This document shows, in pieces, positions 11,181-31,296 of a stretch of 64,000 nucleotides of DNA (positions are counted from its first letter, which is position 1; each line of letters opens with the position of its first letter). Under the pieces are notes generated by a model. It worked only from the letters and a program-made list of their open reading frames with translations. It made no database searches and had not been told where the DNA came from. Origin of the DNA: Bugula neritina (Eukaryota > Animalia > Bryozoa); the NCBI GenBank assembly GCA_964035545.1, contig OZ037766.1:25656339-25720338 (forward strand). Reading direction: 5' to 3'. The translations under genes were made by a program, and so were the position numbers.

Positions 11181-14100
11181 TTATTGCCAATAGCTGCTGT
11201 ACTTTTTCCAGTCAAATTTAGGAAGATAGCTGATTGCATCACTATTATTTTCATTGCCATTACCTGTAAAACACAGCATAACATAGTTTAATATTTGACT
11301 TATTAATGGCTAAATCTATTCATAAGAATGAATGCTTCAAGTTAGTGACAAACTAATAACGTTATGCTCATTTATTGCTAATGTTATGGAAAAGTGTTCA
11401 ATCACTTTGTGTATATACATGAAGCAATAATATAGTAGAGTCTTTTAGCATAAGTTTTTAGCATGTCATTGGTGGTAGAAGTGGTAGATTTGTACAGGAT
11501 ATAAGGTGTGTGGCAAAAATTATCAACTTATTGAAAATTTAAATTTATTTAGTGTTGTTCTTTTACAAAAAGCTAAGCTAAGCTAAGCAATATTATTGTA
11601 AACTTACTGTTTCCATTATTGCTTCCTATATTCCCATTGCCATTGTTTACACCATTACCACTTCCAACATTTCCATTACCATTGCTTTGCCCATTATTCT
11701 TTCCCAGATTGTCATTACCATTTCCGACTCCATTATTTGACCCTATGTTCTCATTACCATTGTCTAAAACAAAACAGCATAAAATAGTTGTTTCAATGTT
11801 GAAAATTGCTATTAAATTTAAAACTGATAATTTTTAAGTTTTTAGGTGCATATTATTAGCTGGAAGCCAATTTAAAAATTTGCTAAAGCATTCATACCAT
11901 TTCCATTATTGCTTCCAAGATTGCCATTTCCATTTTCTTTTCCGTTGCCAGATCCTTTGTTAATATTCCCATTTCCTGTAAAGGGTGTTCAACATTATTA
12001 GGTCATATAATTTTGCATTATTATCTGTTGCTCGTCAAAACAACAGCACAGCTACAGTTTAAAAGTTAGGAGATAGTATTTTTTTCAATCACGGTTACCG
12101 TTCAATGTCAAGCACAATTATATTCTCTAATCTATATCATGAAGGGGTCATTCAAATATTAAGAGTGATTCACAAATATAAAAATGGCTGCCACTAGCTC
12201 ACCTGCACCATTAAGAGCTCCAATATTGTCATTTCCATTCATCTGACCATTATCAGATCCATCATTGATATTTCCATTTAGGAATCCATTTCCACTTCCA
12301 ACATTGTCATTGCCTGCAAAATAATTCTCTCAATGCATTATTGTTGCAAATTTCAGCCATGTTGTCTTTTTAAACATCGAAAATGTTTTGAAGCCATGGC
12401 TATTATCCCAATCGTGTGGTTTTGAATGACAAAAGATGATGCATTATGGGTAAACTGGGTAAACTTAAAACTACAAAACTAGCTAGTGTGTAAAATGAAT
12501 ATACTTCCTTAGTGGTCCTCTCTATATTATTGTTTTTCATTTTCCCAGCCGACTAATTCTGATTTACCGTTGTCAATTCCATTTGCAGCTCCAATGTTAG
12601 CGTTGCCATTTTCTCTTCCATTGTGAGATCCTACATTATTTCCTCCATTATCTGCCCCATTACTGTTTCCACTGTTATCATTACCATTGTCAACTCCATT
12701 AAAATCACCAACATTCTCGTTTCCATTGCCGACTCCATTTCCATGTCCCGCATTTCCATTGCCTATTTTATAAAAGTTAAAATTTATGTTAAATAAAAGG
12801 GTGCATTTATAAGAAACTAAAGACCATTATTTTTGGAGCTTAACTTGCATATTTTGACAAGATATATAGTTGGTTATATGGTAGACACAATTTAGCCCGT
12901 TGTTTCAAAACTTAACTATTTATTTTTTCAATATATTCAAAAAATAGCAGTAGCAAGGAGAACAACAGAGATTTTCACAGATTTGTATTACTAAATTTAT
13001 GCATTGTATAATTATTTTTTATCATTATTTTTTATTACAACACTCTTATTTTTACTATATGGTAGTTATTATGTTGCAAAAATGACCTGTTTAATTTTAT
13101 TAGAATAATCAAAATAATCTTAAATATTTTTCATAACAAATCATTAATGGCATTGTTTAATCATAATGCTTGCACAATATTTTGCTGAAAAGACTGCTAT
13201 GGTTTCTAAGACAAGTTGCAACTGATTCAACCTACCATTCATTTTACCATTTTTGTCTCCTTTATTTTGGTTACCATTTCCTTGACCATTACCAGTTCCA
13301 TTATTTACATTTCCATTATTGCCTCCGTTGAAATCTCCCACATTGTCATTGCCATTTGCAACACCTGTGAAATAGAGAAGCAACCAATGAAAATGACTGT
13401 CAGTATAATTGCAGAATTTTAGTTTTTTGAAATTGGATTTAATAATATTTTTCCACAGTGTATGATAGTATATAGTCTATGCTACAAGCATTAATACTTG
13501 TAAAAATTACTTATTGTGCAGATTCGAGTTATGGCAGATATGCTTAATTCTATTCTGATTAACTTATTCCTAATTGTTTTGTCATATAAATGTCTTAATA
13601 AAATTTATTGTAGAGCTGTCTTTATATGTTAGAGCTTGTATGCATGTGTAGTAAACTACACGCATTATATATACACATGCAATGCTATTGTCATATATTT
13701 ATATGGTATATCATTTCATTATGTTTAACGTTTTAAATTCAACTTACCATTAACATTTCCAATATTATCATTTCCATTTTCAGATCCACTACTGTTTCCC
13801 TTATTTCCATTTCCGTTGCCTTGACCATTTAAGCTACCAACATTAACGTTGCCATTATCTGCTCCGTTCTTATCACCAAGGTTAGCATTGCCATTGATTA
13901 TGCCATTACCATTTCCAAAATTGCCATTTCCTGAAAAAATTTGCCATATGCATTATTTTATTTAATAACAGAGTTTAAAAAAAATTATATGGAAAATCAA
14001 ATAATAATTAATTAATAATTAATATTTTATACCAGCTTACCATTACCAAATCCATTCTTATCTCCAGTGTTCTGATTGCCATTTTTTCCACCATTGCTTT

Positions 14101-17100
14101 CACCCTTATTTTCATTTCCATTACCGATCCCATTTCCAGAGCCTGTGTTTGAATTACCAACATCAACAGCATTACCATCTCCATGATTCCCATTTCCATT
14201 TGCAAAGCCATTGTGGTGGCCGTCGTTGGCATTGCCAACATTGTTCCCATTATTATTTCCAATGTTTTTATTGCCATTAGTTCTTCCATTCATATCCCCA
14301 TTGTTGGCTAAAAGTTTATAAAGAAGTTTATTAATTTTGTTTAATGATGAGGCAAGTGAAAAGGTAATTGATAATTGCAATAGGTATTAATTTTTAATGG
14401 CTAAAAATAACAGGTTTAGTCATTAAAATTATTATTCCTCACCGTTTCCCACAGCATTTCCATTATCAGCTCCACTATTTTCATTTCCATTTATCACTCC
14501 ATTACCAGTGCCATTGTTGACATTACCATTCCCATTACCATTTGAGTTACCATTGTTGTCATTGCCATTAATGGAGCCATTCGAATCTCCTTTGTTGTTT
14601 CCGCCATTACCATTTCCTTCAATGTTATAAGACCAATGTAATCATTTTGAAAAGAACCACTTTGGGAGTTATATGATAATTAACATTTGCACACATGCAA
14701 TCTATTAACTTTATAAAAAAAGTAAACTAAACATTCAAGTTACTTTTCAATGTACATGATTGATGTCATCAAAAATATAACTTAGTAGACCTTCAGATGC
14801 TAAAATATATAGATGGACCACCTACCATTATGGCTGCCGTTGTTGCTGTTTCCATTAAAGCTACCATTATTATCTCCTGTATTCACAACTCCATTTCCAT
14901 TACCATTCTCCGAGCCCATATTGCTAAAAAGGTAAAGCAATATGGTCTACAATATACCTCTTGCATAAGTAAACTGCATGTTTGTAGGTTTGTAAAGTCT
15001 AAGCTTATGTGATGGCACTAGAAATTGTCTTTAAATTAGTTCAGCATTTTTTACTCATATAATTTGATGTCATGCTAAGTAGAAAGAAATTAAACACCAC
15101 CTCATGTACTATAAATTAATATGGTTCAATACATTGTAAATTTGTTTATATGCTTAATAACTTATAGCTGACTCTCAGCACTAGACATAAAACTTATACT
15201 CTGCAAGTCTACATGGTGTTTTTTCTCATTACACAGAATTTATTCTTACTTGTTTCCGTTGTTGTTTCCATTACCACTGCCGTCGTTTTTTAGTCCATTG
15301 CCATTACCATTTGAATTTCCTTTGTTATCATTACCATTATGGACTCCATTGCTATCACCAGTGTTTGAGTTTCCATTATTATTACCAGTAGATGAGCCAT
15401 TGTTCCCTGCAGCAATAGCATAAAGTTTTCCAAAAACTGCTAAAACACTATTTTCTAGAGAAAGTGTATCTATGCTTAAGTTATAGAATTGAAGACATTG
15501 ATGTCAAATACATATTGTTCTAACTTATATTAAGATAAAACCATTTCTATTGCGCGATTTTGTGTGCCATTATGTAATATATATATTAATTGTTGTACGT
15601 CAAAAGCTCAGATATATTGGTGTAACAAAACAGTTAGGAGGAATTGGAATTGAAGTGGTCTAATGGATAGAGTTTTAGAATTCAGATAATAGTGCACATG
15701 CATATAAGCTTTTGTTAGTTTTTCAAGTATAAAATTTATAAAACTTTTTCTATGCTGAACACTTTTCTAAAGTCCTAAGTTGATACAAACCTTTGGGCAA
15801 GTAATTAAGTTACTTTCCCTCATGTTGTAACAGGTATATAGATAATGCAAATAATGTTCACCTAATGAAATTATAGAAATTTTTTCAAGTGCAACGCACT
15901 AATCTGTGATAGATATAGTATAGCAGATTGTATTATGTCTCCATTATAGTCATGTTGTGACATCATTGCTGTGTGTGTTTGGCTACTTACTGTTTCCATT
16001 ATTGCTTCCATTTGAATCTCCAATATTTGTAAGTCCTGCAGCATTTCCATTACCATCACCATTGTTGTCATTGCCGTTGTATACACCATTTTTATTTCCT
16101 GTGTTGCCATCACCATTCACATTTCCGTTACTAGTCCCGTTGTTTCCTGCCAATAAGTACACAGCGTATCGTAAATTATTTTAAGTATATTATACATGTA
16201 TATGAAACAAAATAATAAGAGGGATGATATTTAAAAGTTGACTAAAAGTTAGGCAAGTTCAAATTTTGACCTGTGACCCTGATTTGCTTAGTTTTAATCA
16301 TATAATTTTATCATATTTTAAGTTTTTCATTATAAGTTTTGAGTTATGACCACTTTGCATTAACAACCTTAATATTGGATAACATCATCAATTAATATAA
16401 CTAGTGAAAATATTGAATAAAATAAGAGCAACTTGTGCCTTGCTTTGCCAACATAATGTGAATAACAATCAAGGAAGTGACTTATATAGCAGATAGCTTT
16501 ACTAATAAAAAGAACAGCTTGTAGCTACTCATCTACTATATCAATTCTTGTAAATATACACAACTCCTCCTAGCCTTGACTTTACTTACGATTTCCATTT
16601 TCGTTGCCATTTTCATTTCCCTTATTTTCGACTCCATTCAAATTTCCATTGTCATCTCCATTATTGTTATTTCCATTAGCATTTCCATTTGTGCTCCCAA
16701 TGTTTTCATTGCCATTACTGTTACCATTACCAACTCCATAATTATCATTTCCATTCGCATTACCATTGCCACTTCCAACATTTCCATTACCATTGCTATT
16801 TCCCTGCGATTGCCCATCATTTCCTAAATAGATAACACAACTTCTAATATACCAAAATTGAAAGTATAATTCTGGAAATGAAAATTGCTTTTGTTTATAT
16901 TTACATTTAAAGTACAAGCATCATTGTTCTTGTACTTTTTCTATTTAAATCTGATCAAGCACTAAATTAACTGGAATTTTTTATTTAACAGTTGAAAATC
17001 ATTTAAACCTGCTTTAATGAGCACTCTTTTATGCAGTATGATATATCATATAGTATTATCCCAATATGTATAACACACATTCTTGCTTTATATTCTGTGA

Positions 17101-19637
17101 AACTGGTCTATTTATATGTGAGTCCTCTAGGTTATTCCAGGCATGTTTATGTCCTCAAAGCACTTCATCATTAAGTGAACAAATGCAAGTTAAGAAAAGG
17201 ACCCTTTAAAGTTTAAAGCATTGTATGTAGATTAAATATAAAACCTCCATCGAAATAATCGCATTGACTGTGAGTATTTCAACATCTATGGTAAACTATA
17301 CATCTTTTGAAGTCAATGTTGCCACTGTTATTCTGTTAACTGGTACTATAATCAGTGTTATGCAATGATTAGTCAGTCCCCTTGGCACTAGTAGGTATAT
17401 TTCCTTGTTTGATCTGACCAATGTAGTAATCCTGTGTTATAATCTCCAGGAATTATTGGATTAAGGATTAATTACTACATTTTATCTAATAATTTCACAA
17501 TAACCAATTTATATCTGTTATTATCAATTAAACTAATATTCAGCTTCATGCTATCAGTTATAAACATTATGCAAGTTGACACCAGACAACACTAATTATG
17601 AATCAAATGCGAAACTCAAAAATTTTGCTCATCTAGCATCAAATGAATTGCATTTGTATAACTGCATGATATTACCATTTCTACCAATTTCTTAATATAA
17701 CTATCCTTGGTTTAAGAATACGTCATTAAAACATATAAGATGCATCCCTATACTCAACAGTATCGACCTCTATAATACTTTTCTCTATTAGGTCATAAGA
17801 TACTGGTATAGAATTCATTACACACAGAATTGCATGCTGTTTGAATATAATATGCCTAAAATTTAGATTTTATTCCAATTTTGCGTAATATTTCCACATA
17901 GTTTAGTAGAATAATGTAACTAACCATTGCCATTAGCATTTCCATTTAGATTGCCATCGTTGTGATTGCCGTTGTTGTTACCATTTTTATCTCCTGCATT
18001 TTCATTGCCGTTTTCATTGCCATTAGCATTACCCATATCCAGGTTTCCATTGAAGTTGCCATTATATGTGCCATTGTTGCCATTACCATTTTTGCTACCA
18101 ATGTCTGTACCATTGTTTCTGTGAAGTACAGAGAAACTGGTTTATATAGTTATACCCACAACATAATATATTGGTACTTGAATAAAAACAATGTCTAATA
18201 GAAAGATTGCAAGATTGAAATGAAAGAAATTGAAAGAAGAATATTTTAGTTAAATTTGTAACTTACCCATTACCATTAGCATTTCCATTGTCATTGCCGT
18301 TATTTCCATTACCATTAAAATTACCAGTGTCATTACCAATGTTTCTATAAAATTACAAAACATGTTTATAAAAATTACATTGGATGCTGTTGAACACATG
18401 TAAGATAATTTTTTACAATTACTAAAATACTGCTAGATAGTATATACATTGCCAACAGAATTATACTGAGCATGAGTGTAGTGTAGTGTACTGCTACTCT
18501 ATGTACCAAAGTGTATTGTTATTTTTACTATATAGTATAATGTACTGATACTGTTACTATGTAGCATAGAACGCTCCTACGGTTACTATGTAGTGTAGTA
18601 TACTGGTGCTATTACTATGTATTATACTGATACTGTTGCTATGTAGTGTGGTATAAAGCACTGTTACTTTTACTATGTGGCATAGTACACTGTTACTCTT
18701 ATTATGTAGTATAGTACACTGCTACTCTTACTATGTAAAGAACTACTAACCTATTGCCGGAGAGATTCCCATTTCCTGTTCCGTTATTAAAATTTCCGTT
18801 AACATTTCCTCGATTGGTACCTGTAGAATAATTTACAATGTTTCTGCATCTACCTAGTAACTTTGTAGTATGGCTACTATAATAATGGCTGGCAACTGTT
18901 TAATTTACCAAAGCCATAATTATAGCTTTTTCAATTCCAGAAAGATTCACTGAACTACTGAAATAACATTATGGATTCTTAAACTGTAAAGTTCTTTAAT
19001 CATTAGAATATAATAATTATTATCTTGAATTTTTTATTTCAGTTTTTCGTATTATTTTAGATTTACAAGAGATTGATATAAGATTTTACCATATAAGGAA
19101 GTTATGAATTTACATCAAAACTAAAATATTTTCCAATGCTTACTTTACTGTTTGATGTTCATGTTGATGGCAATACTTAATATGTTGACTAGTATTGTTA
19201 TAAAGCTTCTATATAGTCATGTGTGATTTAATTTAACAACTTTTAACAAGTTTTTAGCATGAGTCAACTAGTTATTAAACTAATAATCTAATAAGCTCTT
19301 ACCTTCTCCATTTTGATTTCCATTGTTTGTTCCAGTTTCGTTTCTCATCCAAATACGATGACTGTTTTGAATAGCCTCAGCTCTTGATTTCCAGTCTGTG
19401 CTACTATGGGTTGGGAGTCCCCACGTCACCATAAGTATTGCAGTTAGTGCACAGCATACTGTAGTTGATCGGTGCAATATCTAAAGATACAATACAAATA
19501 GTCATACATATGTTAGCATAGCAATCTCTATCTATATAATTTGGTGAAACACTAATTTCAAGTTAAAATCATTATAACTTGCTTGAGTTATAAATTTATG
19601 AAGACAATTGAGTAATTGTGTTACTTACTTTTGACAT
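11181..19637 (-). CDS. Secreted Asn/Gly-rich 13-residue tandem-repeat protein, paralogue A (849 aa, 58 repeats, 18 coding exons)
   Basis: Exons 19637-19629, 19480-19303, 18820-18751, 18344-18267, 18118-17925, 16823-16590, 16146-15991, 15406-15250, 14923-14826, 14616-14443, 14307-14041, 13930-13748, 13364-13236, 12762-12568, 12313-12203, 11975-11898, 11763-11608, 11263-11181 (2550 nt, GT-AG, phases compatible). Signal-peptide-like start MSKILHRSTTVCCALTAILMVTWG, then WKSRAEAIQNSHRIWMRNETG, repeats such as NDNVGDFNGGNNG, and tail DAISYLPKFDWKKYSSYWQ*. Confidence 0.9.
17200..17460 (-). mobile_element. Possible highly decayed LINE endonuclease fragment in an intron of paralogue A
   Basis: Minus-strand frames give IIPGDYNTGLLHW and VPVNRITVATLTSK, loosely like the GDFN and PTR motifs of APE-type LINE endonucleases; many stops and frameshifts. 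Confidence 0.25.
18475..18740. repeat. Degenerate ~30-bp minisatellite (actatgtagtgtagtatactg-like) in an intron of paralogue A
   Basis: Recurring ctgttactatgtag...tagtacac units. Confidence 0.65.
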
Positions 19638-19740
19638 GATGTTTGCAGACTGGTAATTGTTTAGCAGTGAATGATAAATTTTTTATATTCTTCTCTCATA
19701 TAAAGTGTTAAATGTGATAATGATGGACTTGGCGGAGACC

Positions 19741-19786
19741 TTATATATGCTTCTGAAAAACAGTAATAACTAATATAATGAATCAT
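19741..19786 (-). promoter_or_regulatory. TATA box and upstream AP-1-like element of paralogue A
   Basis: Minus-strand TATATAA at 19747-19741, ~100 bp upstream of the ATG; ATGAATCAT at 19778-19786. Confidence 0.5.
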
Positions 19787-20754
19787 TGCTAAGTAAATTG
19801 TTGCATAAAAATTAGTCATTTAAACATTACAGGTGGGTGGTGGTGGAACTCAACCTAAGATTATGCTGAAAAGTTTAGGTCACCAAGGCTAATATATTGA
19901 GAGATGGTAACTGTCACCACAACGTCATTACCATACAGAGGAAGGGTACAGAGTATACCACATGTAAAGTCTGTATTACTCAACTGATGATTTGCACCTT
20001 TCTGTGGGAATGGTTACCTTGCAGCATAAATCTGTATTACACTTTGTGCAATAACTACTGGTGCATTTGTCTATACCTTGATTACAGGCATGTATACTAT
20101 ACGTCTGTATCCCATAGGTGATTTGACTAATCCTCCCATGAAATATAATGCATATATCTTAAGATTTATTATAGTAAAAACTTTGCACAATTTCTTGCTA
20201 ATTACTTGCTTCTTTTATGCATTTACTCTTCTGCTCTAAGTCTACACAGCATTATGTAGCCAAGAGGCTCCTATAGAGTTATCCGTGGTAATGCAGTTGG
20301 GCTGACAAATAAAAAAAATTACTAATGACAATCTTTATAACAATTCTGAGAATATAGAGTGAGAATAAATTTTTCTATTTTCTAATTTCTCATTTTATTG
20401 TGATAAACTATGCAGGTTGCTTCCGCTTATGTATTTGCTAAAATATGCAAGGGGAACATTAAAAATGAATTAGTATTAGTTTAAAGCAATTTCTGTAGGT
20501 CTATAATACTATATTGGTCACCAAGAGAGACTAATTTTTCTACAACTGATGAGCTCAGAATCATTGGTTTTTAGCTAACAACCTTGTTATATTTTACACA
20601 ACTGCATTATTTTGAGTCAGCACGTAAAATTATGACCTGTAAATGTATTAACAATATGCATAATTTAGTAGTTATTAGGAAAAGTAATGTGTAGGGCTAA
20701 AGTTCTACAAGCCCGTCACGTCCACTAATACAGAAAATTTTGGTTCTAAATACT

Positions 20755-21160
20755 ACATGTGTTGTTGTGTGCTGTGTTGTTGTGTATTGTGTTGTTGTTT
20801 GTGTGCTATGTGCTGTGGTGTGTGTGCTATGTGCTGTGGTGTGTTTGCTATGTGCCGTGGTGTGTGTGCTATGTGTGCTGTGGTGTGTGTGCTGTGGTGT
20901 GTGTGTGCTGTGGTGTGTGTGCTGTGATGTGTGTGCTGTGGTGTGTGTGCTGTGGTGTGTGTGCTGTGGTGTGTGTGCTGTTGTGTGTGTGCTGTGGTAT
21001 GTGTGTGAGTGTGTGCTGTGGTGTGTGTGCTGTAGTGTGTGTGCTGTGATGTGCGTGTTGGGGTGTGTGTTGTGGTGTGTGTGTGTGTGTGTGTGTGTGC
21101 GTGCGTGCGTGTGTGAGTGTGTGTGTGTGGGTGAGTGGGTGGGTGGGTGGGTGAGTGTGT
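20755..21160. repeat. Compound (TG)n / (GTGTGCTGTG)n simple repeat
   Basis: Directly visible; explains the V/C and H/T ORFs here. Confidence 0.95.
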
Positions 21161-21616
21161 AGCAGATATCTCAGGGTTTGTCCTTTCGTCAACAAAAAAC
21201 CAAGCTTCATCGCCCCAATGAAAAAAACTTATATTTTTATCAAAGCATAATATTTAAAAGACGGTAACCTCAAGCAGAGAGCTCAAGTAACTTATGGATA
21301 TTCTATAAGTTAAAAATGTCAAGGTTTTATATTTTCACAAATTACTTTGTATGACAGTAAGTGGAAGGAGGGGGAGGGGTTACAGACGCACTTATTAAGC
21401 TAAAAATAAACTTTGACTCAACAGTTTTTCAAGAAATTGTGCGATATGTCTGAAATTATTGCCTTTTATATAGCTGGAGGTTAGTAAGGTAAATTTGCCA
21501 ACCCTTTGAAAAGCCTTTACTGTCAAGAACATATAACACCATAGGCTCACTTTACACACACAGTACTATACATAATAATATATTGTAATATTAAGAATGT
21601 TTTAGATGGTACTATA

Positions 21617-21827
21617 GGGAGCGGCTGTGGTCTAGGGGTTAAAGCGTTTGCCTTATAGGAAACACAAGGTCGTGGGTTTGAGCCCGGGTACAGGCTCTTG
21701 GTGATGTTAGAAAGAGCATCCAGTCATAATTGGTCCTGTGCCTCATCTAGAAAAGTCCTTAGCCCGTTTTAACAAAAACCCTTTGTTTCGAACAGGAATA
21801 GTGACTATAAACTTGCATGAGAGTTTC
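21617..21827 (+). mobile_element. tRNA-derived SINE (~211 bp) with 17-bp target-site duplication
   Basis: A-box-like TGGTCTAGGGG and B-box-like GGTTTGAGCCC, then ggtgatgttagaaagagcatccagtcataat and a 3' tail gtgactataaacttgcatgagagtttc. Flanked by identical ttttagatggtactata at 21600-21616 and 21828-21844. Confidence 0.88.
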
Positions 21828-24800
21828 TTTTAGATGGTACTATATCACTGTATAATAAAAATACAAGCATATAGGTGTTATTAGCATTATCATCTTACCA
21901 ACGCCTTTTATAATGCTTGTAACAATGCTAACCAACTTTACTTGCTTTCCTGGAGCTCAGGCTACTCTGTTATAAAATATCTCTTATCGGGTTTGCAGCA
22001 ATTCATTTAAACGATTTGAAACACTGCTTGGTTTGACCATATTCTAGCATCAGTGAAAACATTGGCCACTCAATAATTTGACAGTGTTCAAAGGCCACAT
22101 ATTTTTCACAACAGGTGATCTTACAGTCACATAAATATCTGTTTTAGCTCTACTTTTAATGCTTTAAGTTATTTTTATATACATTTTGGCTATTTATAAG
22201 TAAGATCAAATGTAATTTTGCAATATTCTACAATCAAAAATTTGTATTTTAAGTTAATTTAAAGTAATAATTTATAGAAGCGCTGGCTATGGTGCTCAAA
22301 ATGATTTTTTATCATAACTGCATTTTATGGAGAGAGGTTTTATAATTTTGTTATAAGGCTGGCAAAAACCTTTGTCATAACGTGTTTGCAGTTTTCTCAA
22401 AAAATTGTATAAAACATGAAATTCTTATCTCTTGGAAATTGCTTATATTTGCAGCTTAAAGTTTTATCTATTAAGCTGTCTTTAAATTTATTTTGGAAAA
22501 ATCAACATCATTTAACAAATGCCAAGTATGAACTACAAATGTTTTGGTGCTATTCTTTAATTGTAGCACAAAATTTTATTAAACTGCTTTTTTAAAAAGC
22601 CGCTTTATCTAGCATATAAATGATATAAGCTATTATACTTCTTTTGTACTACTATATATATGCCATTCTTATTAGTATTTAGCCTATAATTTGCGATATG
22701 TTTCAGATTTAAAATATTTAAAATATAATTTGTTAATGTTTTTAGCTTTAGAGATTGATAACTAGCACGAGTTTATTATTTTGCTATAAATAATTACATT
22801 GTTTCCAAGGTATTTTTTGAAATATTGTGGTGCATATTATGCATCATTCAATATATTTAACAGTTTTTACAGTTGGCAGTAATTTATTCGTGGTTTTATT
22901 GAAAGCAGTAGTGCGTCAAACACACTTTTCTGATGACCAAGTAACCAAATTAAACTAATTTTAGTTTAGGAAGTACAACAGACACTTTAGTTCTACTCCC
23001 ACTCAATGCTGTTCCTTTTCACATGCCCTTAAGGTGACCTCAGATGTGTCATTTATAGTGTGTGAATATATTATATGCAGATGAAAAGTAGACCAAAATA
23101 ACTCTGTATAAAATCAACCAATGACTCATGAATTTACCAGTTAATTTTTTCTTCTCTTATTCCAATAATTGAAGCTGTCTGTAAACTGTGATTGACCAGT
23201 GGAATTGAGAGATATTTTTAAAAAGTGGAGAAATGGTCTGATTCATTTAGAGCATGGGGAAGAGTTGAAATTATGCTCAAGAAATGAAAATGCATTTTTG
23301 CATGTTACAACATAGGAAATATTTGAACATAGGAAACATGTGAATCATTTTTGACTAAGAAAGTTATTTTGATGCTTTTTGTTGCTTTTGATAGCATGGT
23401 AATTTCAAAATTTTTGTTAGACAGAATCCTTTTTTTTAGATGCATATCACATTAAATTTTAACTGGTATATAAACTTTGTTTATTGTAGGGCCTGTTAGT
23501 GATGGTACATCATTAAATTACTAGTATTTATCTGTCAGCACGTGAACTGACCAGCAGTACAAAGTGCTCTATGCCTGTAATATACCAGGCTAATTTAATC
23601 AAGGGGTATACCATAGAAGTCCATAAATTTGTAGCTCCCGTTGGAGTAAAGTATATAAGTATTCTTAAGCACATCATAGTAACTGTCTTGTTTGATTCAA
23701 ATTACTTGTTTGGGGATTTTGGAGTTAGGTCCCACAACTTCAAAATTGTGAACCAGAAACTACTGCACTCATTCACCTCCAACTCGGAGCTGCTTATAGA
23801 ACAATTCCTGTTATTAGCCTAAATATCATAATCATAAACTTAAGACGTCAATGTTGCAGTTTACTATAGTAACTCGAGGGCTAACCTCGTTATATAATAT
23901 ATGCTGGAGATGCAGACATTTTTTTTCCAATAATTTGTATATTATAGTGCTTTATATAAAACATGTTGATGAAGACTGAGCTTTGGACTTTAAATATTTT
24001 CAACCAGTATTTTTACTTTAAAGTTTTTAGAGTTGTCTTCTTCATGGTATGAGTTGCTATAAACAGCTTATATAACACATGTATTGCTATAAATTAAAAT
24101 AGTATGTCATATAATATAACTCTTCCTACATAATGTATCAAAATTCAACATTCTACAATGATTTTTTTAGATTCTATCATTTTAGATTTGACACTGCTGA
24201 TAAAAATGAATTGAAATTGTTCAAGCTAAGTCTTTCTACACAATAACCCATGACTAAAGCAAATAAAAAGACTGTTCAGTAAAAAAAATCATTTTATAAT
24301 AGGATAGAATAGTATTACAAAGTTATTTATTTAATAGAAACTGCAAATAGATGGTCTATTTTCATAACAAAAACTTAGAATTACAGCAACAAAACCTTTC
24401 TTATACTCTGTTATGCATTAAAATCTTAGTTCATTCAACCCAATTTCATCGAATAAACAAAAATTTTCACTTTGTTTTTTTGAGATTATAGCATGTGATT
24501 TTTATAACATATTTTTTAAAATGTCTCAAAATCTTTACATGTAGTATGTAACTATTATGGTACTGTATATAATTTACTCAGCTAGAAACTGAGGCCTATA
24601 CGTGTGAAGTTGCAATATTACATATTACATATGAAGTTGCAGTATTAAGTAAGTTATAAGCATTTTGTACAGCATTCATAATTCTTGTATACAGTAATGT
24701 AATAACATAGCATACAAATAAATACATATTTTTAGAGCTACTATCACAATTCAGCAAGCTATTATAGTGTTTCTTTTAATTAGCCTGACTTCTTGTGGTG

Positions 24801-25656
24801 AAATTAAATGATTACATTTCATTTCAGGGAAGTAACTCCAAGTATAGATGTTAATGCATGTTGCTTGTTTATTGGTCGCTGTAGCCTGTATTTCGTAATT
24901 GGCTTACAAAGCAGAAAAACTGATTGCACAAGTGCATATAAATTATAGCAGACGATAACATAGGTTAAATAGGATGAGGAGTTTAGGCAAGTTACACTTA
25001 TTACACCTATACAAATATGTCCATACCTTAATGAATGTCCTCTATGTTTTTGCAACTTACATAATTACTTGTTGAATAATTAAAATAGATAACACTTGGT
25101 TCTTTGATAAAAAGATAGATATATTTGGCACTTGGCGGTTTAGAATATTTTTAAAACATTATGTACACATCATGCTATGACAGTGAGCAAAATTCAAGAT
25201 AATTGTATAAATACAAAAATGATAAAGATTTGGTAATAACAATTGCTAGCAAATTTTAATGTCGAGAAAAGTTGGTACAAAGTGGCTGAAAAACAATTAA
25301 CAGTTTATAGTATTTTATTCCCTACTCTCAAATGTTATTTTCCATCTGCTACAATCACATTGAAAAAAGTATGTTTAAAATTGTTATTATAACAAAAAAT
25401 GAATATTACAATTGGTAAGAAATTTGATGAGAAATGGTGAGGAAGAAGAAGGAGTTATCCTTCTTCAGTTTATTCAGATAAACCCTCTTCAAGTTTATCG
25501 TCATGAAACTGATTAGAGAGAAAGAGCTTTTGGCTCTATGCCACATTAAACTCAATGATTGTTATTCTTGTAGCACATGAAAGTATTATTTATGCAGCAA
25601 ATAAGTTTATTGTACTTCTAGTAAAGCCATAAATTTCATTAATGTTTTTACTTGAA

Positions 25657-28600
25657 TTACCAAAAACTTCCACTGACATATTGCTTCCACGATCCTGGCA
25701 CGTAACCTCCACTACCTGGTGCATCACCATTGTTGTTTCCGTTACCTGTAATAGAAACAAAGGAATTACAGAATGATGAAAATGCTTTATTATGTTGCTT
25801 ACCATGTATATATAAATCATATTTTGTAAAAACCCTTAAAGCATTTAATGTTTAACTTATCTAGGTGCAAAACAATTCTTCATGGAAACATGTACCATTG
25901 TTTTAAAATGATGTCACAAAATAAATAAAGAAAATACTTTCCATGCAAATGAATTGCTAATGTAATTTAGTACAAATTTGGATAAACTTGAAATGTCAGA
26001 GTACAAGTGGAAGTAAAAGCTATATTCTTGCATGAATGATATTTTAAGTTTCGAATAATTATATACAACATGTGGAAATGCATATTATTCTATAAACCTA
26101 GTTTCACTATTATAGTGTTTTCCAAAGTCCAGTTAAAGAACTTTCAGAATACACAACTCTGCTCTATATGGCTAGGTTAAAACTATGCAATTAGTAAACT
26201 TTGGTGTAGGTTTAAGTGGTGGTATTCTTACCACTTCCATTGTTGGTTCCAACATTTCCATTGCCGTTATTTGAACCATTTCCACTTCCAACGTTACCAT
26301 TACCATTGCCTTGTCCATTGCCACTACCATCATTACTGTTGCCATTTCCCATACCATTTTGTGACCCTGCGTTATCGTTTCCATTTCCAACACCTAAAAA
26401 TAACAAGTTAATAAAAGTCAATTTATAATAGGAAAAGCATAAACAATAAACATGATATCAAAAATCAACACTAGTGTTGGATAGTATAGCGCTGTATTTA
26501 TTCCAGCATACCTTGCAAATAAACTGGTTTCTTTGCTATTTAATTTTATAATCTTTAAGGGTACATATTGATAATGCTAGTTATTTACTTACCATTTTTA
26601 TCACCAATGTTGTCATTTCCATTTCCAGCTCCATTACCACTTCCACTGTTTCCATTACCATTACCTTGACCATTGTTGTCACCTAGGTTGGCATTGCCAT
26701 TGTCTTCTCCATTTTTATTTCCGGCGTTTCCGTTACCATTTATTTGACCATTATTATTTCCTTCATTTTCATTACCTATAAGCAATAATAATTTTATAGA
26801 TCTATTAACATTTCGTTTTTATGGTTTATTAAACTAGTTTTAGTTAGCTGAGATTTAAAGGAGTCTTCTACTCTTTCTTACGACTGACTCACCATTTAAG
26901 CCTCCATTTCCGTTACCGCTGTTGTGGTTACCATTCATTCCTCCATTGTTGTTTCCAAGGTTGTCATTTCCACTTCCAAATCCATTACCAGTTCCGCTAT
27001 TGGAATTTCCCACTTCATTTGCGTTGTTGCTGCCATGGTTTCCATTACCGTTTGAAACGCCATTGCCATTGCCAGCGTTTGCATTTCCAACATTATTGCC
27101 ATTGTTGTTTCCTGTGTTTTCATTACCGTTGAGTTGACCGTTTCCATCTCCAGCATTTCCTAAATTTCAAGTTGTATGTTTGACATTAGATAATAAGTTA
27201 ATAAGCATGATGAGCACAGAACATATGAATCTGGTTTACATTTAGATGCAACATTTAGTTTCGCATTGCGTTGAAGCTCTTACCATTGCCTGCAGCATTT
27301 CCGTTGTCATTTCCATTATTCTTGTTTCCATTTAGTTGCCCATTTTCATTGCCACTGTTACCATTACCATTACCATTGCCATTAGAATTGCCGGAGTTAA
27401 CATTACCATTGTTTGCACCATTTTGATCACCACTGTTTCCACCTCCGTTACCATTTCCTGGAAAATATTGAAAGAATGTTAAAAATTGATTGAAACTAAA
27501 CCTTGTTCAGTTTAAAAATTATAAGTAGAAGTTTAGGTTTAAATTACAAACTTTTTAATTTATATTAGTAACACTTTTAAGGTTTGCTATTTATAGAAAA
27601 TATTTATATAGCTGTTGCATAATTAACGGCTCATACTTTTATGTGTCAAAGATATTTTACAAATAACTATAATATTGAATCTAATGACTATTTACTAAAC
27701 TACAATAGCTTACTAACCATTATGACTTCCTGAGTTGCTGTTGCCATTGAAATGTCCATTATTGTTGCCATTATTTCCAACTCCATTTCCATTACCATTT
27801 TGGTTTCCAGCATTACTACAAAGTGCAAGAAAGCATAAAATAAGAGTTATCTTCTATAACCTATAGTATATTCTATATTATGCTTATTTAGAATTGTAAA
27901 AATTAGAAAATAATAGTTATAAAAGTTAATTGCATAACACATGAAAAGATTTAAGAAAGCTGGCTAAACCAGATGCATTTACACTATGAGGTAGCAATCT
28001 TGCTAAATAAAGCTAGTGCTACAATTTAATAATTTTTAATGCCTTACTGATTTCCGTTGATGTTTCCACTTCCATTACCATCATTGTTCAATCCATTGCC
28101 ATTACCATTTGAGTTTCCGGTGTTAGCATTACCATTATCAACTCCATTGTTTTTGCCAGTGTTCGTGTTTCCATTATTATTACCATTTGATCCCCCAATA
28201 TTTCCTGTAAAATGATAAAAATGCTATGTATAGACCACATTGCTTGATGTAGCAATTTAAAAAGCTGAGTTAATTTAAACCTAGTTTAGTAATTTTATTA
28301 ATTGGGTCTACTTTCCCAAATTTTAATTCAAAAGGTAGTAGCCAGAAAGATGAAACAAGCCAATAAATTTAAAATCTTTCATCAGGTTTTATCATATTGA
28401 ATGTAGACTAACCATTGCCGTTTTCACCTCCGTTGTGGCTACCGATATTTGCAAGTCCATTTGCATTACCATTGTCATTGCCTTTGTTATCATTTCCATT
28501 ATTGACTCCATTGCTATCTCCTGTATTACCATCTCCATTCACATTTCCATTGCTAGATCCGACATTTTCTGCAAAGAATAATCAGAATATTCAAATTGAG

Positions 28601-30869
28601 CTTATAGAAATATTAAACCTACATCCTATTGTATCTACTTTTTAGATACTATATAGTCAACGTAGACCCTCTCTAAATTGAATAAATGCTTTGTCATTAA
28701 AACTTTAAAACATGTTGTCATAGAAAATAGACATTTCAAATATTTATCGAGCTTAGTCAGAATATGTTGAACCCACATACTGAAGTTTAATTTACACTTA
28801 CTGCCGCAATTAACTTTCGGAGTTATAAGTTTTCATAAGATGTCATTTTGTAAATTTAGAATACACTTACTGTTTCCATTGTCTTTTCCGTTTCCTGAGC
28901 CAGTGTTCTCTACACCATTCAAGTTTCCATTGTCATTGCCATCATTGAGATTGCCATTGTTGTTACCATTCATGTTTCCAGTGTTATCGTTACCATTAGA
29001 ATTACCATTGCCAACACCATCGTTTGTATTGCCATTACCATTTCCATTTGCATTACCATGGTTTGAATTACCATTGCTATTTCCTTGTTGTAAACCATCA
29101 TTACCTATTTAAATTATATTTGTCTTAGAAATGTCATATAATTTGGAGTAAGGTTAAGCCGAAGCAGCATATTTATCAAGTTTTAAGATTGGGTGCTATA
29201 GTGAGAGACAAACAAACCTAACATATATCAGTTTATTTAAAAATAGTATCTTCATTTTTTGACAAAAATTGATTAAGTGTGGGGCTATGGGCATGTAACA
29301 AAATTTATTAACTTGCATTAGATTATCCAATCTAGGTTTTTAATATTAATAAAGACAGTGTCACAGTATATGACACTCAAAGCATATTATATTTTATATA
29401 ATCCTGCAAATAATCATCATTTCCGTATAGATATAAGATTATAGGTGGCTGATCCTAATTATTTCAATCCACAAACCACACTTGTATATGTAAAGCGCTC
29501 AGTATTAACTCTTCAAACTGTCACAGTTAAAAAGCATTTATTATGGCTGTTTTCTTATAGGTGTTGTTTCAATAAATTATTATCAAATGTAAATTTTTAT
29601 CTCAATACATATTTCCTGGTTACAACTATTTTTTGGTTATTTCTAACAGCTAAATTATTATGCAGAGATTGTAACTATATTAGACAATTTAAGGTATATG
29701 ATTCAATAATGCTATTTACCATTTCCATTAGCATTGCCATTCAAACTGCCGTCATTGCTGTTGCCATTATTATTGCCGTTTTTGTCTCCAGCATTCTCAT
29801 TTCCATTCTCGTTACCGTTCTTGTTTCCAATGACCAAGTTTCCATTGAAGTTACCATTAAATGTACCATTATTGGCATTACCATTTCTGTTTCCAACATC
29901 TGTACCATTGTTTCTAAACAGATCACGTCAAACATTAATGTTATACTTATAACTCAAAACTAGTTTTTAAGAAATACAAAAAGTAACCCGCATTAGTTAA
30001 AAATAGCTTTTGCATTTTTATACAGCGTAAAAGCATAACGTTTATTTTTATTTATTATAGCTGTCAAAACATTTACTTATAGCAAAATAAATAATTTGTT
30101 ATAAAAAGATTATTGTGAAAAAGATAGCTTACCCGTTGCCATTTGCATTTCCATTGTCATTGCCTGAGTTGGAATTTCCATTTACAGTACCAATATCACT
30201 ACCAGTGTTTCTGTAACAATTTTAATTAATCAAAGATTATGTGCATGTTTGAAAAATAAGAAATTAAAATTAATATTTACATAATATTGTAAACATTTAT
30301 AGCATTCAAAAATAAATGCAGGAAATTATATATTGATATATTGCAGCATGATAACATATAATAATGAATGTCTGTCAAACTTGTAAATACTGACCTATTT
30401 CCATTTAGGTTACCATTTCCTGCACCATCATTACCGTTGCCGTTGATATTACCTCTGTTAGAACCTACAGTAACAATAGTAACAATTTTGTTTCTTTGAA
30501 ATATTGCATCGTAGTATAAGTTGTGATAACTTATTTAGACCAAAACTGAAGAAAATCAATTCTTCGATTCACACAGCATAGCTTTACATATGAGGTTATA
30601 ATATCGTTCTTGAACTATTACCATGAAAATGCACAGAAGACCGCAAACTACACAATCTTAAAAGAAGCTTTTTTAAAAAAAATCTACTTCTTACCAGCTT
30701 CATTTTCATTTCCGTTACTAGATCCGGTTTCATTTCTCTGCCAAACTCGGAAATCTTGCTGAATTTTATCAGCCCTGGCTCTCCATCCTTCACCAATAGG
30801 AGTAGCATGTGACACAATTGCTATGGTGACCAGCACCAATGCTATGATGACAGACTTTTGATGAACCAT
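25657..30869 (-). CDS. Secreted Asn/Gly-rich 13-residue tandem-repeat protein, paralogue B (678 aa, 45 repeats, 13 coding exons)
   Basis: Exons 30869-30695, 30464-30395, 30210-30133, 29913-29720, 29104-28871, 28568-28413, 28204-28048, 27815-27718, 27457-27284, 27159-26893, 26775-26593, 26393-26232, 25745-25657 (2037 nt). Signal peptide MVHQKSVIIALVLVTIAIVSHA, then WRARADKIQQDFRVWQRNETG, the repeats, and tail DAPGSGGYVPGSWKQYVSGSFW*. Probable non-coding first exon ~31270-31171. Confidence 0.9.
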
Positions 30870-31296
30870 CTTCACAAGTCTAAAAGTACATGATTGGTTT
30901 TGGTTTTTAGGTTGTATAGTTGTTTTTAATCTTCTGGTTGCTTCTAGCCAACTTTGAGATGAGCACTGGTCTTTACTTGTCCATTTAAATTTAAATAAGA
31001 TGCAAAAATTACATTGTTAACTAAGCTAATGATAATATTTTCAAACAAAACTTGAAAATAAGAAACTAAAGTTATATTTCTTTGCAAAGATTAATTGAAA
31101 CTCAAAACTATTGTGTGAAAAAATAAAAGTTTGGAAGTGAATGCAATGTTAACAGCTCGAAGATAAATACCTGATAATTTAGTTGAAGTCTTAGTAGAAA
31201 AGTAAATCCGATCAACGGAATAATTCACTTGAAGGTTTAAGTCACCTTAAAGCTGCGAACAGACACTGTATGATCTGAGCTGTGCACAACAGTCTA

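What the first reader, a model, noticed from the sequence alone, without database searches (positions are those of the whole stretch)
11181..30869. Tandem pair of secreted proteins built from a strict 13-residue Asn/Gly repeat: candidate new extracellular beta-solenoid family
Seen: after splicing, residues 72-825 of paralogue A are 754 aa = 58 x 13 and residues 68-652 of paralogue B are 585 aa = 45 x 13. Every exon I translated follows N-x-N-x-G-x-x-N-G-x-x-N-G (e.g. NENIGSNNGVGNG NDNLGKNNGQSNG NGNVGSGNGVNNG), with no Pro or Cys seen in the array. Both have signal peptides. The x positions and codons vary freely, so this is not simple DNA slippage. Established: fixed-length Asn/Gly repeats form Asn-ladder beta-solenoids or beta-rolls (ryegrass LpIBP ice-binding protein; curli/Fap functional amyloids); beetle antifreeze solenoids use 12-13-residue coils; Gly-X-Asn repeats occur in the mollusc shell proteins nacrein/N66; mycobacterial PPE-MPTR proteins carry NxGxGNxG repeats. 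I recognise none of these with this 5+4+4 13-mer. Inference: a narrow rod with about one repeat per coil (~4.8 A rise, so roughly 28 and 22 nm) presenting a regular amide lattice for mineral templating, adhesive/fibre assembly or ice binding.
Basis: partly seen in the sequence, partly recalled or inferred. Interest (0 to 1): 0.92.

Follow-up and report, generated by a model that had tools for sequence, protein, structure and literature searches.

The report
Bryozoan secreted 13-residue Asn/Gly repeat proteins
Two neighbouring genes of the fouling bryozoan Bugula neritina encode secreted proteins made almost entirely of one strictly kept 13-amino-acid asparagine/glycine repeat that is in none of the family libraries searched, yet also occurs in secreted proteins of bacteria, fungi, algae and a plant, and probably builds thin rods or fibres outside the cell.

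Summary
Observation confirmed. Genes A (849 aa, 58 units) and B (678 aa, 45 units) carry an unbroken N-x-N-x-G-x-x-N-G-x-x-N-G array; RNA contigs from four studies together show all 12 coding introns of B (A not tested). The genome is Bugula neritina chromosome 2. At least six related genes exist there. Between paralogues the seven fixed positions are 94-97% identical while synonymous sites are near saturation. The repeat matches no Pfam, NCBIfam or PDB entry, but it is not bryozoan-specific: the same consensus occurs in secreted proteins of Alphaproteobacteria, Streptomyces, archaea, fungi (one a hydrophobin extension), green algae and hop. In Alphaproteobacteria it forms tandem major/minor gene cassettes, often beside a LuxR regulator and sometimes an exporter or C39 peptidase, reminiscent of curli/Fap. 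One of two AlphaFold runs gave a right-handed 13-residue-per-coil solenoid, at low confidence (pLDDT 47). Best reading: an undescribed cross-domain beta-solenoid module used for extracellular fibre or matrix; fold and function are inferred, not shown. Mineral templating remains possible, ice binding is unlikely. The scan noted this stretch and similar repeats elsewhere in this genome before.

The parts
25657..30869 (-). Gene B coding span, 13 exons, 678 aa (exons 30869-30695, 30464-30395, 30210-30133, 29913-29720, 29104-28871, 28568-28413, 28204-28048, 27815-27718, 27457-27284, 27159-26893, 26775-26593, 26393-26232, 25745-25657)
   Evidence: Model; all 12 introns seen as joints in RNA contigs; N-terminal part annotated as hypothetical protein EB796_016628 / KAF6025069.1 of Bugula neritina
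30880..31170 (-). 5'UTR intron of gene B (upstream non-coding exon ends at 31171)
   Evidence: Loose ends at 30881 in RNA contigs X2 and X5 match the sequence upstream of 31171 (table 7)
30804..30869 (-). Gene B signal-peptide-like segment (about aa 1-22)
   Evidence: Hydropathy; sequence; cleavage site inferred by eye
30439..30803 (-). Gene B N-terminal cap (about aa 23-67, spans intron 1) with W-R/K motif and second Trp
   Evidence: similar caps in A and C found by genome search
25738..30438 (-). Gene B array, aa 68-652, 45 units of 13 residues across 11 introns
25657..25737 (-). Gene B C-terminal cap, aromatic and basic (W-K motif)
   Evidence: related caps in A, C, D and in relatives from plastic-debris metagenomes
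11181..19637 (-). Gene A coding span, 18 exons, 849 aa (exons 19637-19629, 19480-19303, 18820-18751, 18344-18267, 18118-17925, 16823-16590, 16146-15991, 15406-15250, 14923-14826, 14616-14443, 14307-14041, 13930-13748, 13364-13236, 12762-12568, 12313-12203, 11975-11898, 11763-11608, 11263-11181)
   Evidence: Model; ten consecutive exon lengths equal those of B; no RNA laid on A
19415..19637 (-). Gene A signal-peptide-like segment (about aa 1-25, split by intron 1)
   Evidence: Hydropathy
18795..19414 (-). Gene A N-terminal cap (about aa 26-71) with D-W-K motif
11256..18794 (-). Gene A array, aa 72-825, 58 units of 13 residues across 15 introns
11181..11255 (-). Gene A C-terminal cap with F-D-W-K motif, Tyr/Trp rich

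Best explanation
A and B are secreted structural proteins. Each 13-residue unit (5+4+4) forms one coil of a narrow, probably right-handed beta-solenoid: the three invariant Gly make the corners, the four conserved Asn stack as internal hydrogen-bonded ladders in place of a hydrophobic core, and the six variable positions face outward (in Bugula largely Asp/Glu/Lys/Ser). That gives stiff acidic rods of roughly 28 and 22 nm (inferred from 4.8 A per coil), closed by short aromatic/basic caps, which stack or bundle into an extracellular fibre or matrix of the colony wall (cuticle, skeletal organic matrix or attachment layer). Shown: sequence, splicing and transcription of B, selection on register, cross-domain occurrence of the unit in secreted proteins. 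Inferred: fold, in/out assignment, assembly, location.
For: No indel breaks the register in 103 units, and across paralogues the fixed positions are 94-97% identical, variable ones 28-43%, while Gly third positions are at or near saturation. Among RNA-versus-genome differences listed for B, 9 of 10 at fixed positions are synonymous and the tenth goes towards consensus, whereas 7 of 12 at variable positions change the residue (only the 40 best-supported of 96 differences were listed). Charged residues fill 24-35% of positions 2, 4, 6, 7 and about 1% of fixed ones; no position is mostly hydrophobic. AlphaFold with a 78-sequence alignment: beta-bridges at 13-residue spacing; superposes on right-handed solenoids at 2.2-2.9 A and on left-handed ones at about 9 A. 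The same consensus in 990 prokaryotic units, where 176 of 202 carriers have a hydrophobic leader, 61 of 119 loci hold tandem repeat genes, 45 have a LuxR/NarL regulator, 14 a membrane-fusion protein and 4 a C39 peptidase within 2.5 kb, an arrangement that recalls curli (CsgBA, CsgD) and Fap (FapBC, FapD; from my own knowledge). Eukaryotic carriers are surface or wall proteins: a fungal hydrophobin extension, a hop root-cap-domain protein.
Against: Both AlphaFold models are below usable confidence (pLDDT 44 and 47), one has no fold, and fold-search Z scores (best 9.6, 1ezg 6.5) are in the range expected for any generic solenoid. No solved relative; the only, insignificant, PDB sequence hit is the flexible 13-residue repeat of fibrinogen alpha chain. 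The bacterial context is circumstantial, heavily weighted to Mesorhizobium, has no background control, and may be convergent with the animal proteins. No tissue, stage or proteomic evidence for Bugula. A 26-residue super-period allows a two-unit coil instead.
Confidence: 0.5

Rival explanations
1. Skeletal biomineralisation protein: the rod (or an unfolded chain) presents rows of Asp/Glu, increased over time by deamidation of its many Asn-Gly sites, that bind Ca2+ and template or inhibit calcite/aragonite, as Gly-Asn domains of mollusc nacrein/N66/pearlin are thought to.
For: Host is a calcifying cheilostome; arrays are acidic (D+E 58 vs K+R 24 in A; pI about 4.3-4.4) and more charged outside than the bacterial ones; 138 and 107 Asn-Gly sites; relatives occur in metagenomes probably dominated by encrusting bryozoans. 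Compatible with the solenoid fold.
Against: The identical unit is used by non-calcifying soil bacteria, fungi and plants; no carbonic anhydrase domain; acidic residues do not form a strict column; no bryozoan skeletal proteome was found in the papers searched.
Confidence: 0.22
2. The array is a disordered or elastomeric low-complexity spacer or hydrogel former (like the 13-residue repeats of fibrinogen alpha-C connector, or Gly/Asn linkers of multi-hydrophobins); function lies in the caps.
For: 68% Asn+Gly, about 30% Gly, no hydrophobic core position; AlphaFold pLDDT below 50; only PDB sequence hit is fibrinogen alpha (E 4-6).
Against: Zero Pro in 168 Bugula units, no length variation, position-specific conservation of individual units between paralogues and of early exon sizes in a divergent species, and the same 5+4+4 spacing in three domains of life are hard to explain for a flexible chain.
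Confidence: 0.13
3. Same beta-solenoid class and role, different geometry: two units (26 residues) per coil, a flattened beta-roll as in ryegrass IBP or curli, giving rods half as long.
For: Even-lag units are more alike than odd-lag units in A, B and C (p 0.0005-0.003; position 10 alternates); many exons of relatives are 78 nt.
Against: The AlphaFold model bridges i to i+13; bacterial arrays come in both odd and even unit numbers; duplication of two-unit blocks explains the alternation without structure.
Confidence: 0.12
4. Ice-binding or antifreeze protein.
For: Coil size like beetle antifreeze protein; Asn-rich solenoids bind ice in grasses (own knowledge).
Against: No Thr-x-Thr or other flat invariant outward face (Thr about 2%, outward positions variable and charged); no PF21300 match in these genes; host is a warm-temperate fouling species (own knowledge).
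Confidence: 0.03

Closest known systems
Pentapeptide_2 (PF01469) / mycobacterial PPE-MPTR repeats
   Same: Asn/Gly periodic extracellular repeat; the first five residues of the unit fit N-x-G-x-x. In bacterial minor subunits PF01469-type decamers run directly into the 13-mers (one protein scores over the Pfam cut-off at residues 79-105).
   Different: Period 13 (5+4+4) rather than 5 or 10; Bugula A and B do not match PF01469; no PPE domain.
Curli (CsgA/CsgB, PF07012) and Fap functional amyloids
   Same: Secreted Asn/Gly/Gln-type repeat subunits; the alphaproteobacterial relatives show major plus minor subunit genes, a LuxR-type regulator and at times a C39 peptidase.
   Different: Different period and consensus; no Curlin Pfam match; no CsgG/CsgF or FapF seen among recurrent neighbours examined; amyloid behaviour untested; Bugula chains are 45-70 units long.
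Tenebrio molitor antifreeze protein (1ezg) and related 12-13 residue solenoids
   Same: Narrow right-handed coil of similar size; low-confidence model superposes at 2.5 A over 81 residues.
   Different: No Cys staples, no Thr-x-Thr face, ten times longer, no sequence similarity.
Lolium perenne ice-binding protein beta-roll (PF21300)
   Same: Asn ladders, Asn/Gly-rich repeat.
   Different: Heptad repeat, left-handed (rmsd 8.3 A to the model), Val core; no profile match to these genes.
Gly/Asn-rich extensions of fungal hydrophobins; Gly-Asn domains of mollusc shell proteins (nacrein, N66, pearlin)
   Same: Composition and extracellular setting; one hydrophobin (KXJ90418.1) carries eight true 13-mers.
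   Different: Mollusc domains are (from my own knowledge) GN or GXN runs attached to enzyme or Cys-rich domains; none appeared among the hits; here the repeat is 86-89% of the protein.

Membership tests
Pentapeptide_2 / PPE-MPTR | Match to PF01469 above the curated cut-off | tested here: not met
   No hit for any Bugula exon; genome-wide search has no match in the window genes
Pentapeptide_2 / PPE-MPTR | Period of 5 or 10 residues, NxGxGNxG motif (PMC12209268) | tested here: not met
   Autocorrelation peaks at 13 and 26 (0.55-0.61), 10 is 0.08-0.10
Pentapeptide_2 / PPE-MPTR | N-terminal PPE domain | tested here: not met
   N-terminal exons have no Pfam match
Curli / Fap functional amyloids | Curlin or Fap repeat profile match | tested here: not met
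   No Pfam or NCBIfam match among 78 segments
Curli / Fap functional amyloids | Secreted major and minor subunit genes with regulator and export functions nearby | tested here: inconclusive
   Seen for bacterial relatives, without background control; not applicable to the animal genes
Curli / Fap functional amyloids | Cross-beta fibres (ThT, Congo red, diffraction) | not testable with these tools
   Needs experiment
Beta-solenoid fold class | Fixed-length repeats without indels and without Pro, Gly at turns, ladder residues in register | tested here: met
Beta-solenoid fold class | Confident predicted or solved solenoid structure | tested here: inconclusive
   pLDDT 44 and 47; one model is a right-handed 13-residue coil
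Ice-binding solenoids (PF21300, insect AFP) | Profile match, or Thr-x-Thr / flat Thr-Ser face, or Cys staples | tested here: not met
Ice-binding solenoids (PF21300, insect AFP) | Ice-binding activity | not testable with these tools
   Needs assay
Nacrein / N66 shell proteins | Carbonic anhydrase domain interrupted by GXN repeats | tested here: not met
   Non-repeat parts are only about 70 and 25 residues, no Pfam match
Skeletal matrix proteins (functional class) | Presence in the mineral's organic matrix | not testable with these tools
   No bryozoan skeletal proteome found in the paper library

The most novel reading that the evidence does not exclude
The 13-mer is an undescribed minimal beta-solenoid with a purely polar Asn core that serves as a functional-amyloid-like building block in all three domains of life: a curli/Fap-like secreted fibre system of Alphaproteobacteria on one side and, on the other, a main structural protein family of the bryozoan body wall or adhesive, giving the first molecular handle on how this phylum builds its exoskeleton.
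Probability: 0.3. Interest if true: 0.88.

Novelty: new variant of a known kind. Interest (0 to 1): 0.68.

Why it matters
Almost nothing is known about the structural proteins of bryozoan cuticle, skeleton or adhesive, although Bugula neritina is a model fouling animal; this gives a defined, expressed, conserved candidate family that can be tested by proteomics and with short recombinant fragments. Independently, the same uncatalogued repeat marks what looks like an undescribed secreted fibre cassette in Mesorhizobium, Methylobacterium and other Alphaproteobacteria, where 110-170 aa subunits in culturable strains make the fold and assembly directly testable. A 13-residue coil with only Asn inside would also be an unusually small natural solenoid, of interest for protein materials.

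Tried and rejected
Artefact or DNA slippage: rejected (codons at fixed positions vary; shuffles; splice joints). Contamination or recent transfer from bacteria: rejected (chromosome 2 of the curated assembly, 12-17 introns, shared exon sizes in a divergent species). A single-exon phmmer search found nothing; the profile search did. Pfam, NCBIfam, PDB sequence, Foldseek and both ESM Atlas feature searches gave no family for the repeat; composition filters weaken these negatives. About 36 of the 89 profile hits share only the 13-residue Gly spacing, not the Asn positions, and were set aside. My first reading of the common bacterial neighbour as an OmpR-type regulator was wrong; it is LuxR/NarL-type. 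Motif-string and bryozoan literature searches found no description. No phylogeny was attempted: a low-complexity 13-mer cannot separate common descent from convergence. The single read-laying run covered gene B, so gene A's splicing and expression are untested.
Full report
Observation. Six-frame scanning shows Asn/Gly-rich open stretches only on the minus strand between 11.2 and 30.9 kb. A splice model scored on composition and GT-AG sites, blind to repeat register, gives gene B (30869..25657, 13 coding exons, 678 aa) and gene A (19637..11181, 18 coding exons, 849 aa) (first exons set by hand). Residues 72-825 of A and 68-652 of B divide exactly into 58 and 45 units of N-x-N-x-G-x-x-N-G-x-x-N-G; 71 of 103 units match all seven fixed positions, none misses more than two, Gly5 and Gly13 never vary, and there is no Pro or Cys in the arrays. 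Most exons are not multiples of 39 nt and introns fall at several places within the unit, yet the register never slips. Shuffles reach at most 10-12 in-register units. RNA contigs from four studies together show joints of the predicted sizes for all 12 coding introns of B and reveal a 5'UTR intron; contigs show presence, not level or tissue. Both proteins start with a hydrophobic leader and have no other hydrophobic segment.

Organism and family. The genome holds at least four more members: C (C2:26038570-26047625, about 990 aa, about 70 units, same run of exon sizes), D (C2:25554985-25562401, less regular, Pro-rich spacer), F (C3:24886872 onward, 13-mers probably followed by a Thr-rich stalk and hydrophobic tail) and G (C4:9024092-9026028, single-exon array with the first Gly shifted by one). 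A, B, C and D have short aromatic/basic caps with a W-K/R motif at both ends. Spliced relatives with the same early exon sizes (70, 78, 194 nt) and a related C-cap occur in marine metagenomes: a close A/B-like gene (L172) and several divergent ones (L033, L174, L175, L177) from samples labelled BRYA16, which I infer to be the bryozoan-dominated plastic-debris study PMC5069773 (the accession link itself was not confirmed).

Selection. Over 40 orthologous units the fixed positions are 97% (A-B) and 94% (A-C, B-C) identical, the variable ones 43%, 28% and 30%; third positions of conserved Gly codons agree 0.42, 0.31 and 0.30 against 0.31-0.34 expected at saturation. Individual units keep their quirks between paralogues. 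Of the differences listed between RNA and genome in B, 9 of 10 at fixed positions are silent (the other restores Asn) and 7 of 12 at variable positions are not. So length and seven positions are under strong constraint, which is the pattern of a folded repeat. A weaker 26-residue period is significant.

The repeat is not bryozoan-specific. A profile of the exons found 89 proteins, 53 with two or more true units: Geosiphon and Ambispora proteins, a Microdochium hydrophobin with eight units before the Cys domain, Coccomyxa secreted proteins, a hop root-cap-domain protein, and bacterial proteins. 990 prokaryotic units have the same seven fixed positions at 92-100% (units were selected on this consensus). 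In Alphaproteobacteria the typical locus is a major gene (leader plus 6-16 pure units) followed by a minor gene in which Pentapeptide_2-like decamers run into 13-mers; 61 of 119 loci have such tandem genes, 45 a LuxR/NarL regulator within 2.5 kb (mostly divergent), 14 a membrane-fusion protein, 5 MacB, 4 a C39 peptidase. From my own knowledge this resembles curli (CsgBA with divergent CsgD) and Fap (FapBC with FapD). Many loci are Mesorhizobium and not independent, and no background rate was measured. The unit also sits in proteins with PEP-CTERM, RTX and YadA-head matches. Whether animal and bacterial copies share ancestry or converged cannot be decided from such a sequence.

Structure. No Pfam, NCBIfam or PDB sequence family covers the unit. 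AlphaFold on a 164-residue exon of C with poor alignment coverage gave nothing (pLDDT 44, pTM 0.14). On an 88-residue exon of B with 78 aligned segments it gave pLDDT 47, pTM 0.31 and beta-bridges at residues 2, 15, 28, 41, 54, 67, 80. That model superposes on right-handed beta-helices and on beetle antifreeze protein (2.2-2.9 A) and badly on left-handed ones; Foldseek found nothing. This is a weak hint, not a structure. Sequence statistics agree with it: charged residues occupy positions 2, 4, 6, 7 and avoid the fixed ones, and no column is hydrophobic, so any core must be made of Asn.

Mechanism. Most likely the chain coils one unit per turn, Gly at the corners and Asn ladders inside, into a capped rod of about 22-28 nm that is secreted and assembles with its paralogues into a fibre or matrix of the colony wall; bryozoan cuticle and intra-mineral matrix are reported to hold protein, chitin and mucopolysaccharide (PMC11358562). 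Bacteria put hydrophobic residues on the outward positions, Bugula acidic ones, which leaves room for a Ca2+-binding or mineral-facing role. The 107-138 Asn-Gly sites per chain are deamidation-prone (own knowledge): folding would protect them, and unfolded chains would turn strongly acidic, a testable difference between the readings. Confidence: fold class about 0.75, fibre/matrix role with one unit per coil 0.5.

Comparison and novelty. It works like known extracellular beta-solenoids and functional amyloids but fails the membership tests for Pentapeptide_2/MPTR, curli/Fap, ice-binding families and nacrein. I found no description in the paper library, which lacks most subscription journals. 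I class it as a new variant of a known kind: an uncatalogued repeat family, new for animals as far as these searches reach, with an apparently undescribed bacterial cassette as the unexpected by-product.

Limits. 

Noticed in passing
L048-L167 (e.g. L067:3996-5107, L147:3407-7998, L145:3456-7695): Alphaproteobacterial cassette of major and minor 13-mer repeat genes with nearby LuxR/NarL regulator, MacAB-like exporter or C39 peptidase; looks like an undescribed curli/Fap-like secreted fibre system.
   Followed up: partly
L168, L170, L171 (viral contigs): The same major/minor gene pair occurs on three viral contigs, one next to a phage ssDNA-binding protein gene (PF10991).
   Followed up: no
G000:C3:24886872-24892500 (L027, L028): Family member F appears to end in a Thr-rich stalk and a hydrophobic tail resembling a GPI signal, i.e. 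a possibly cell-anchored version; several units are near-identical and contain Trp.
   Followed up: partly
G000:C4:9024092-9026028 (L044): Family member G: about 31 units in a single exon with the first Gly moved from position 5 to 6 and many Glu/Arg.
   Followed up: partly
G000:C2:4318735-4319370 (L031): Open frame with pure five-residue G-N-G-N-I type repeats, a pentapeptide cousin of the 13-mer.
   Followed up: no
G000:C4:12777569-12782881, C1:33878116-33878784, C5:12237228-12240545: Long open frames elsewhere in the genome score over the cut-offs of PF01469 or PF21300; may be real repeat proteins or translated DNA repeats.
   Followed up: no
window:1756-3269 (-): Exons of an HMG-box (HMGB-like) gene.
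   Followed up: partly
window:36751-47378 (-): Exons of a FERM-domain protein gene (FERM_M and FERM_C matches).
   Followed up: partly
window:25550-31050: RNA runs of this species differ from the assembly at many positions shared across four studies (contigs mostly 90-99% alike), consistent with cryptic lineages within B. neritina.
   Followed up: partly
P0001, P0006, P0088 (Geosiphon pyriformis): Fungal precursors in which 13-mer blocks are separated by Lys-Arg sites, suggesting release of short repeat peptides by Kex2-type cleavage.
   Followed up: no
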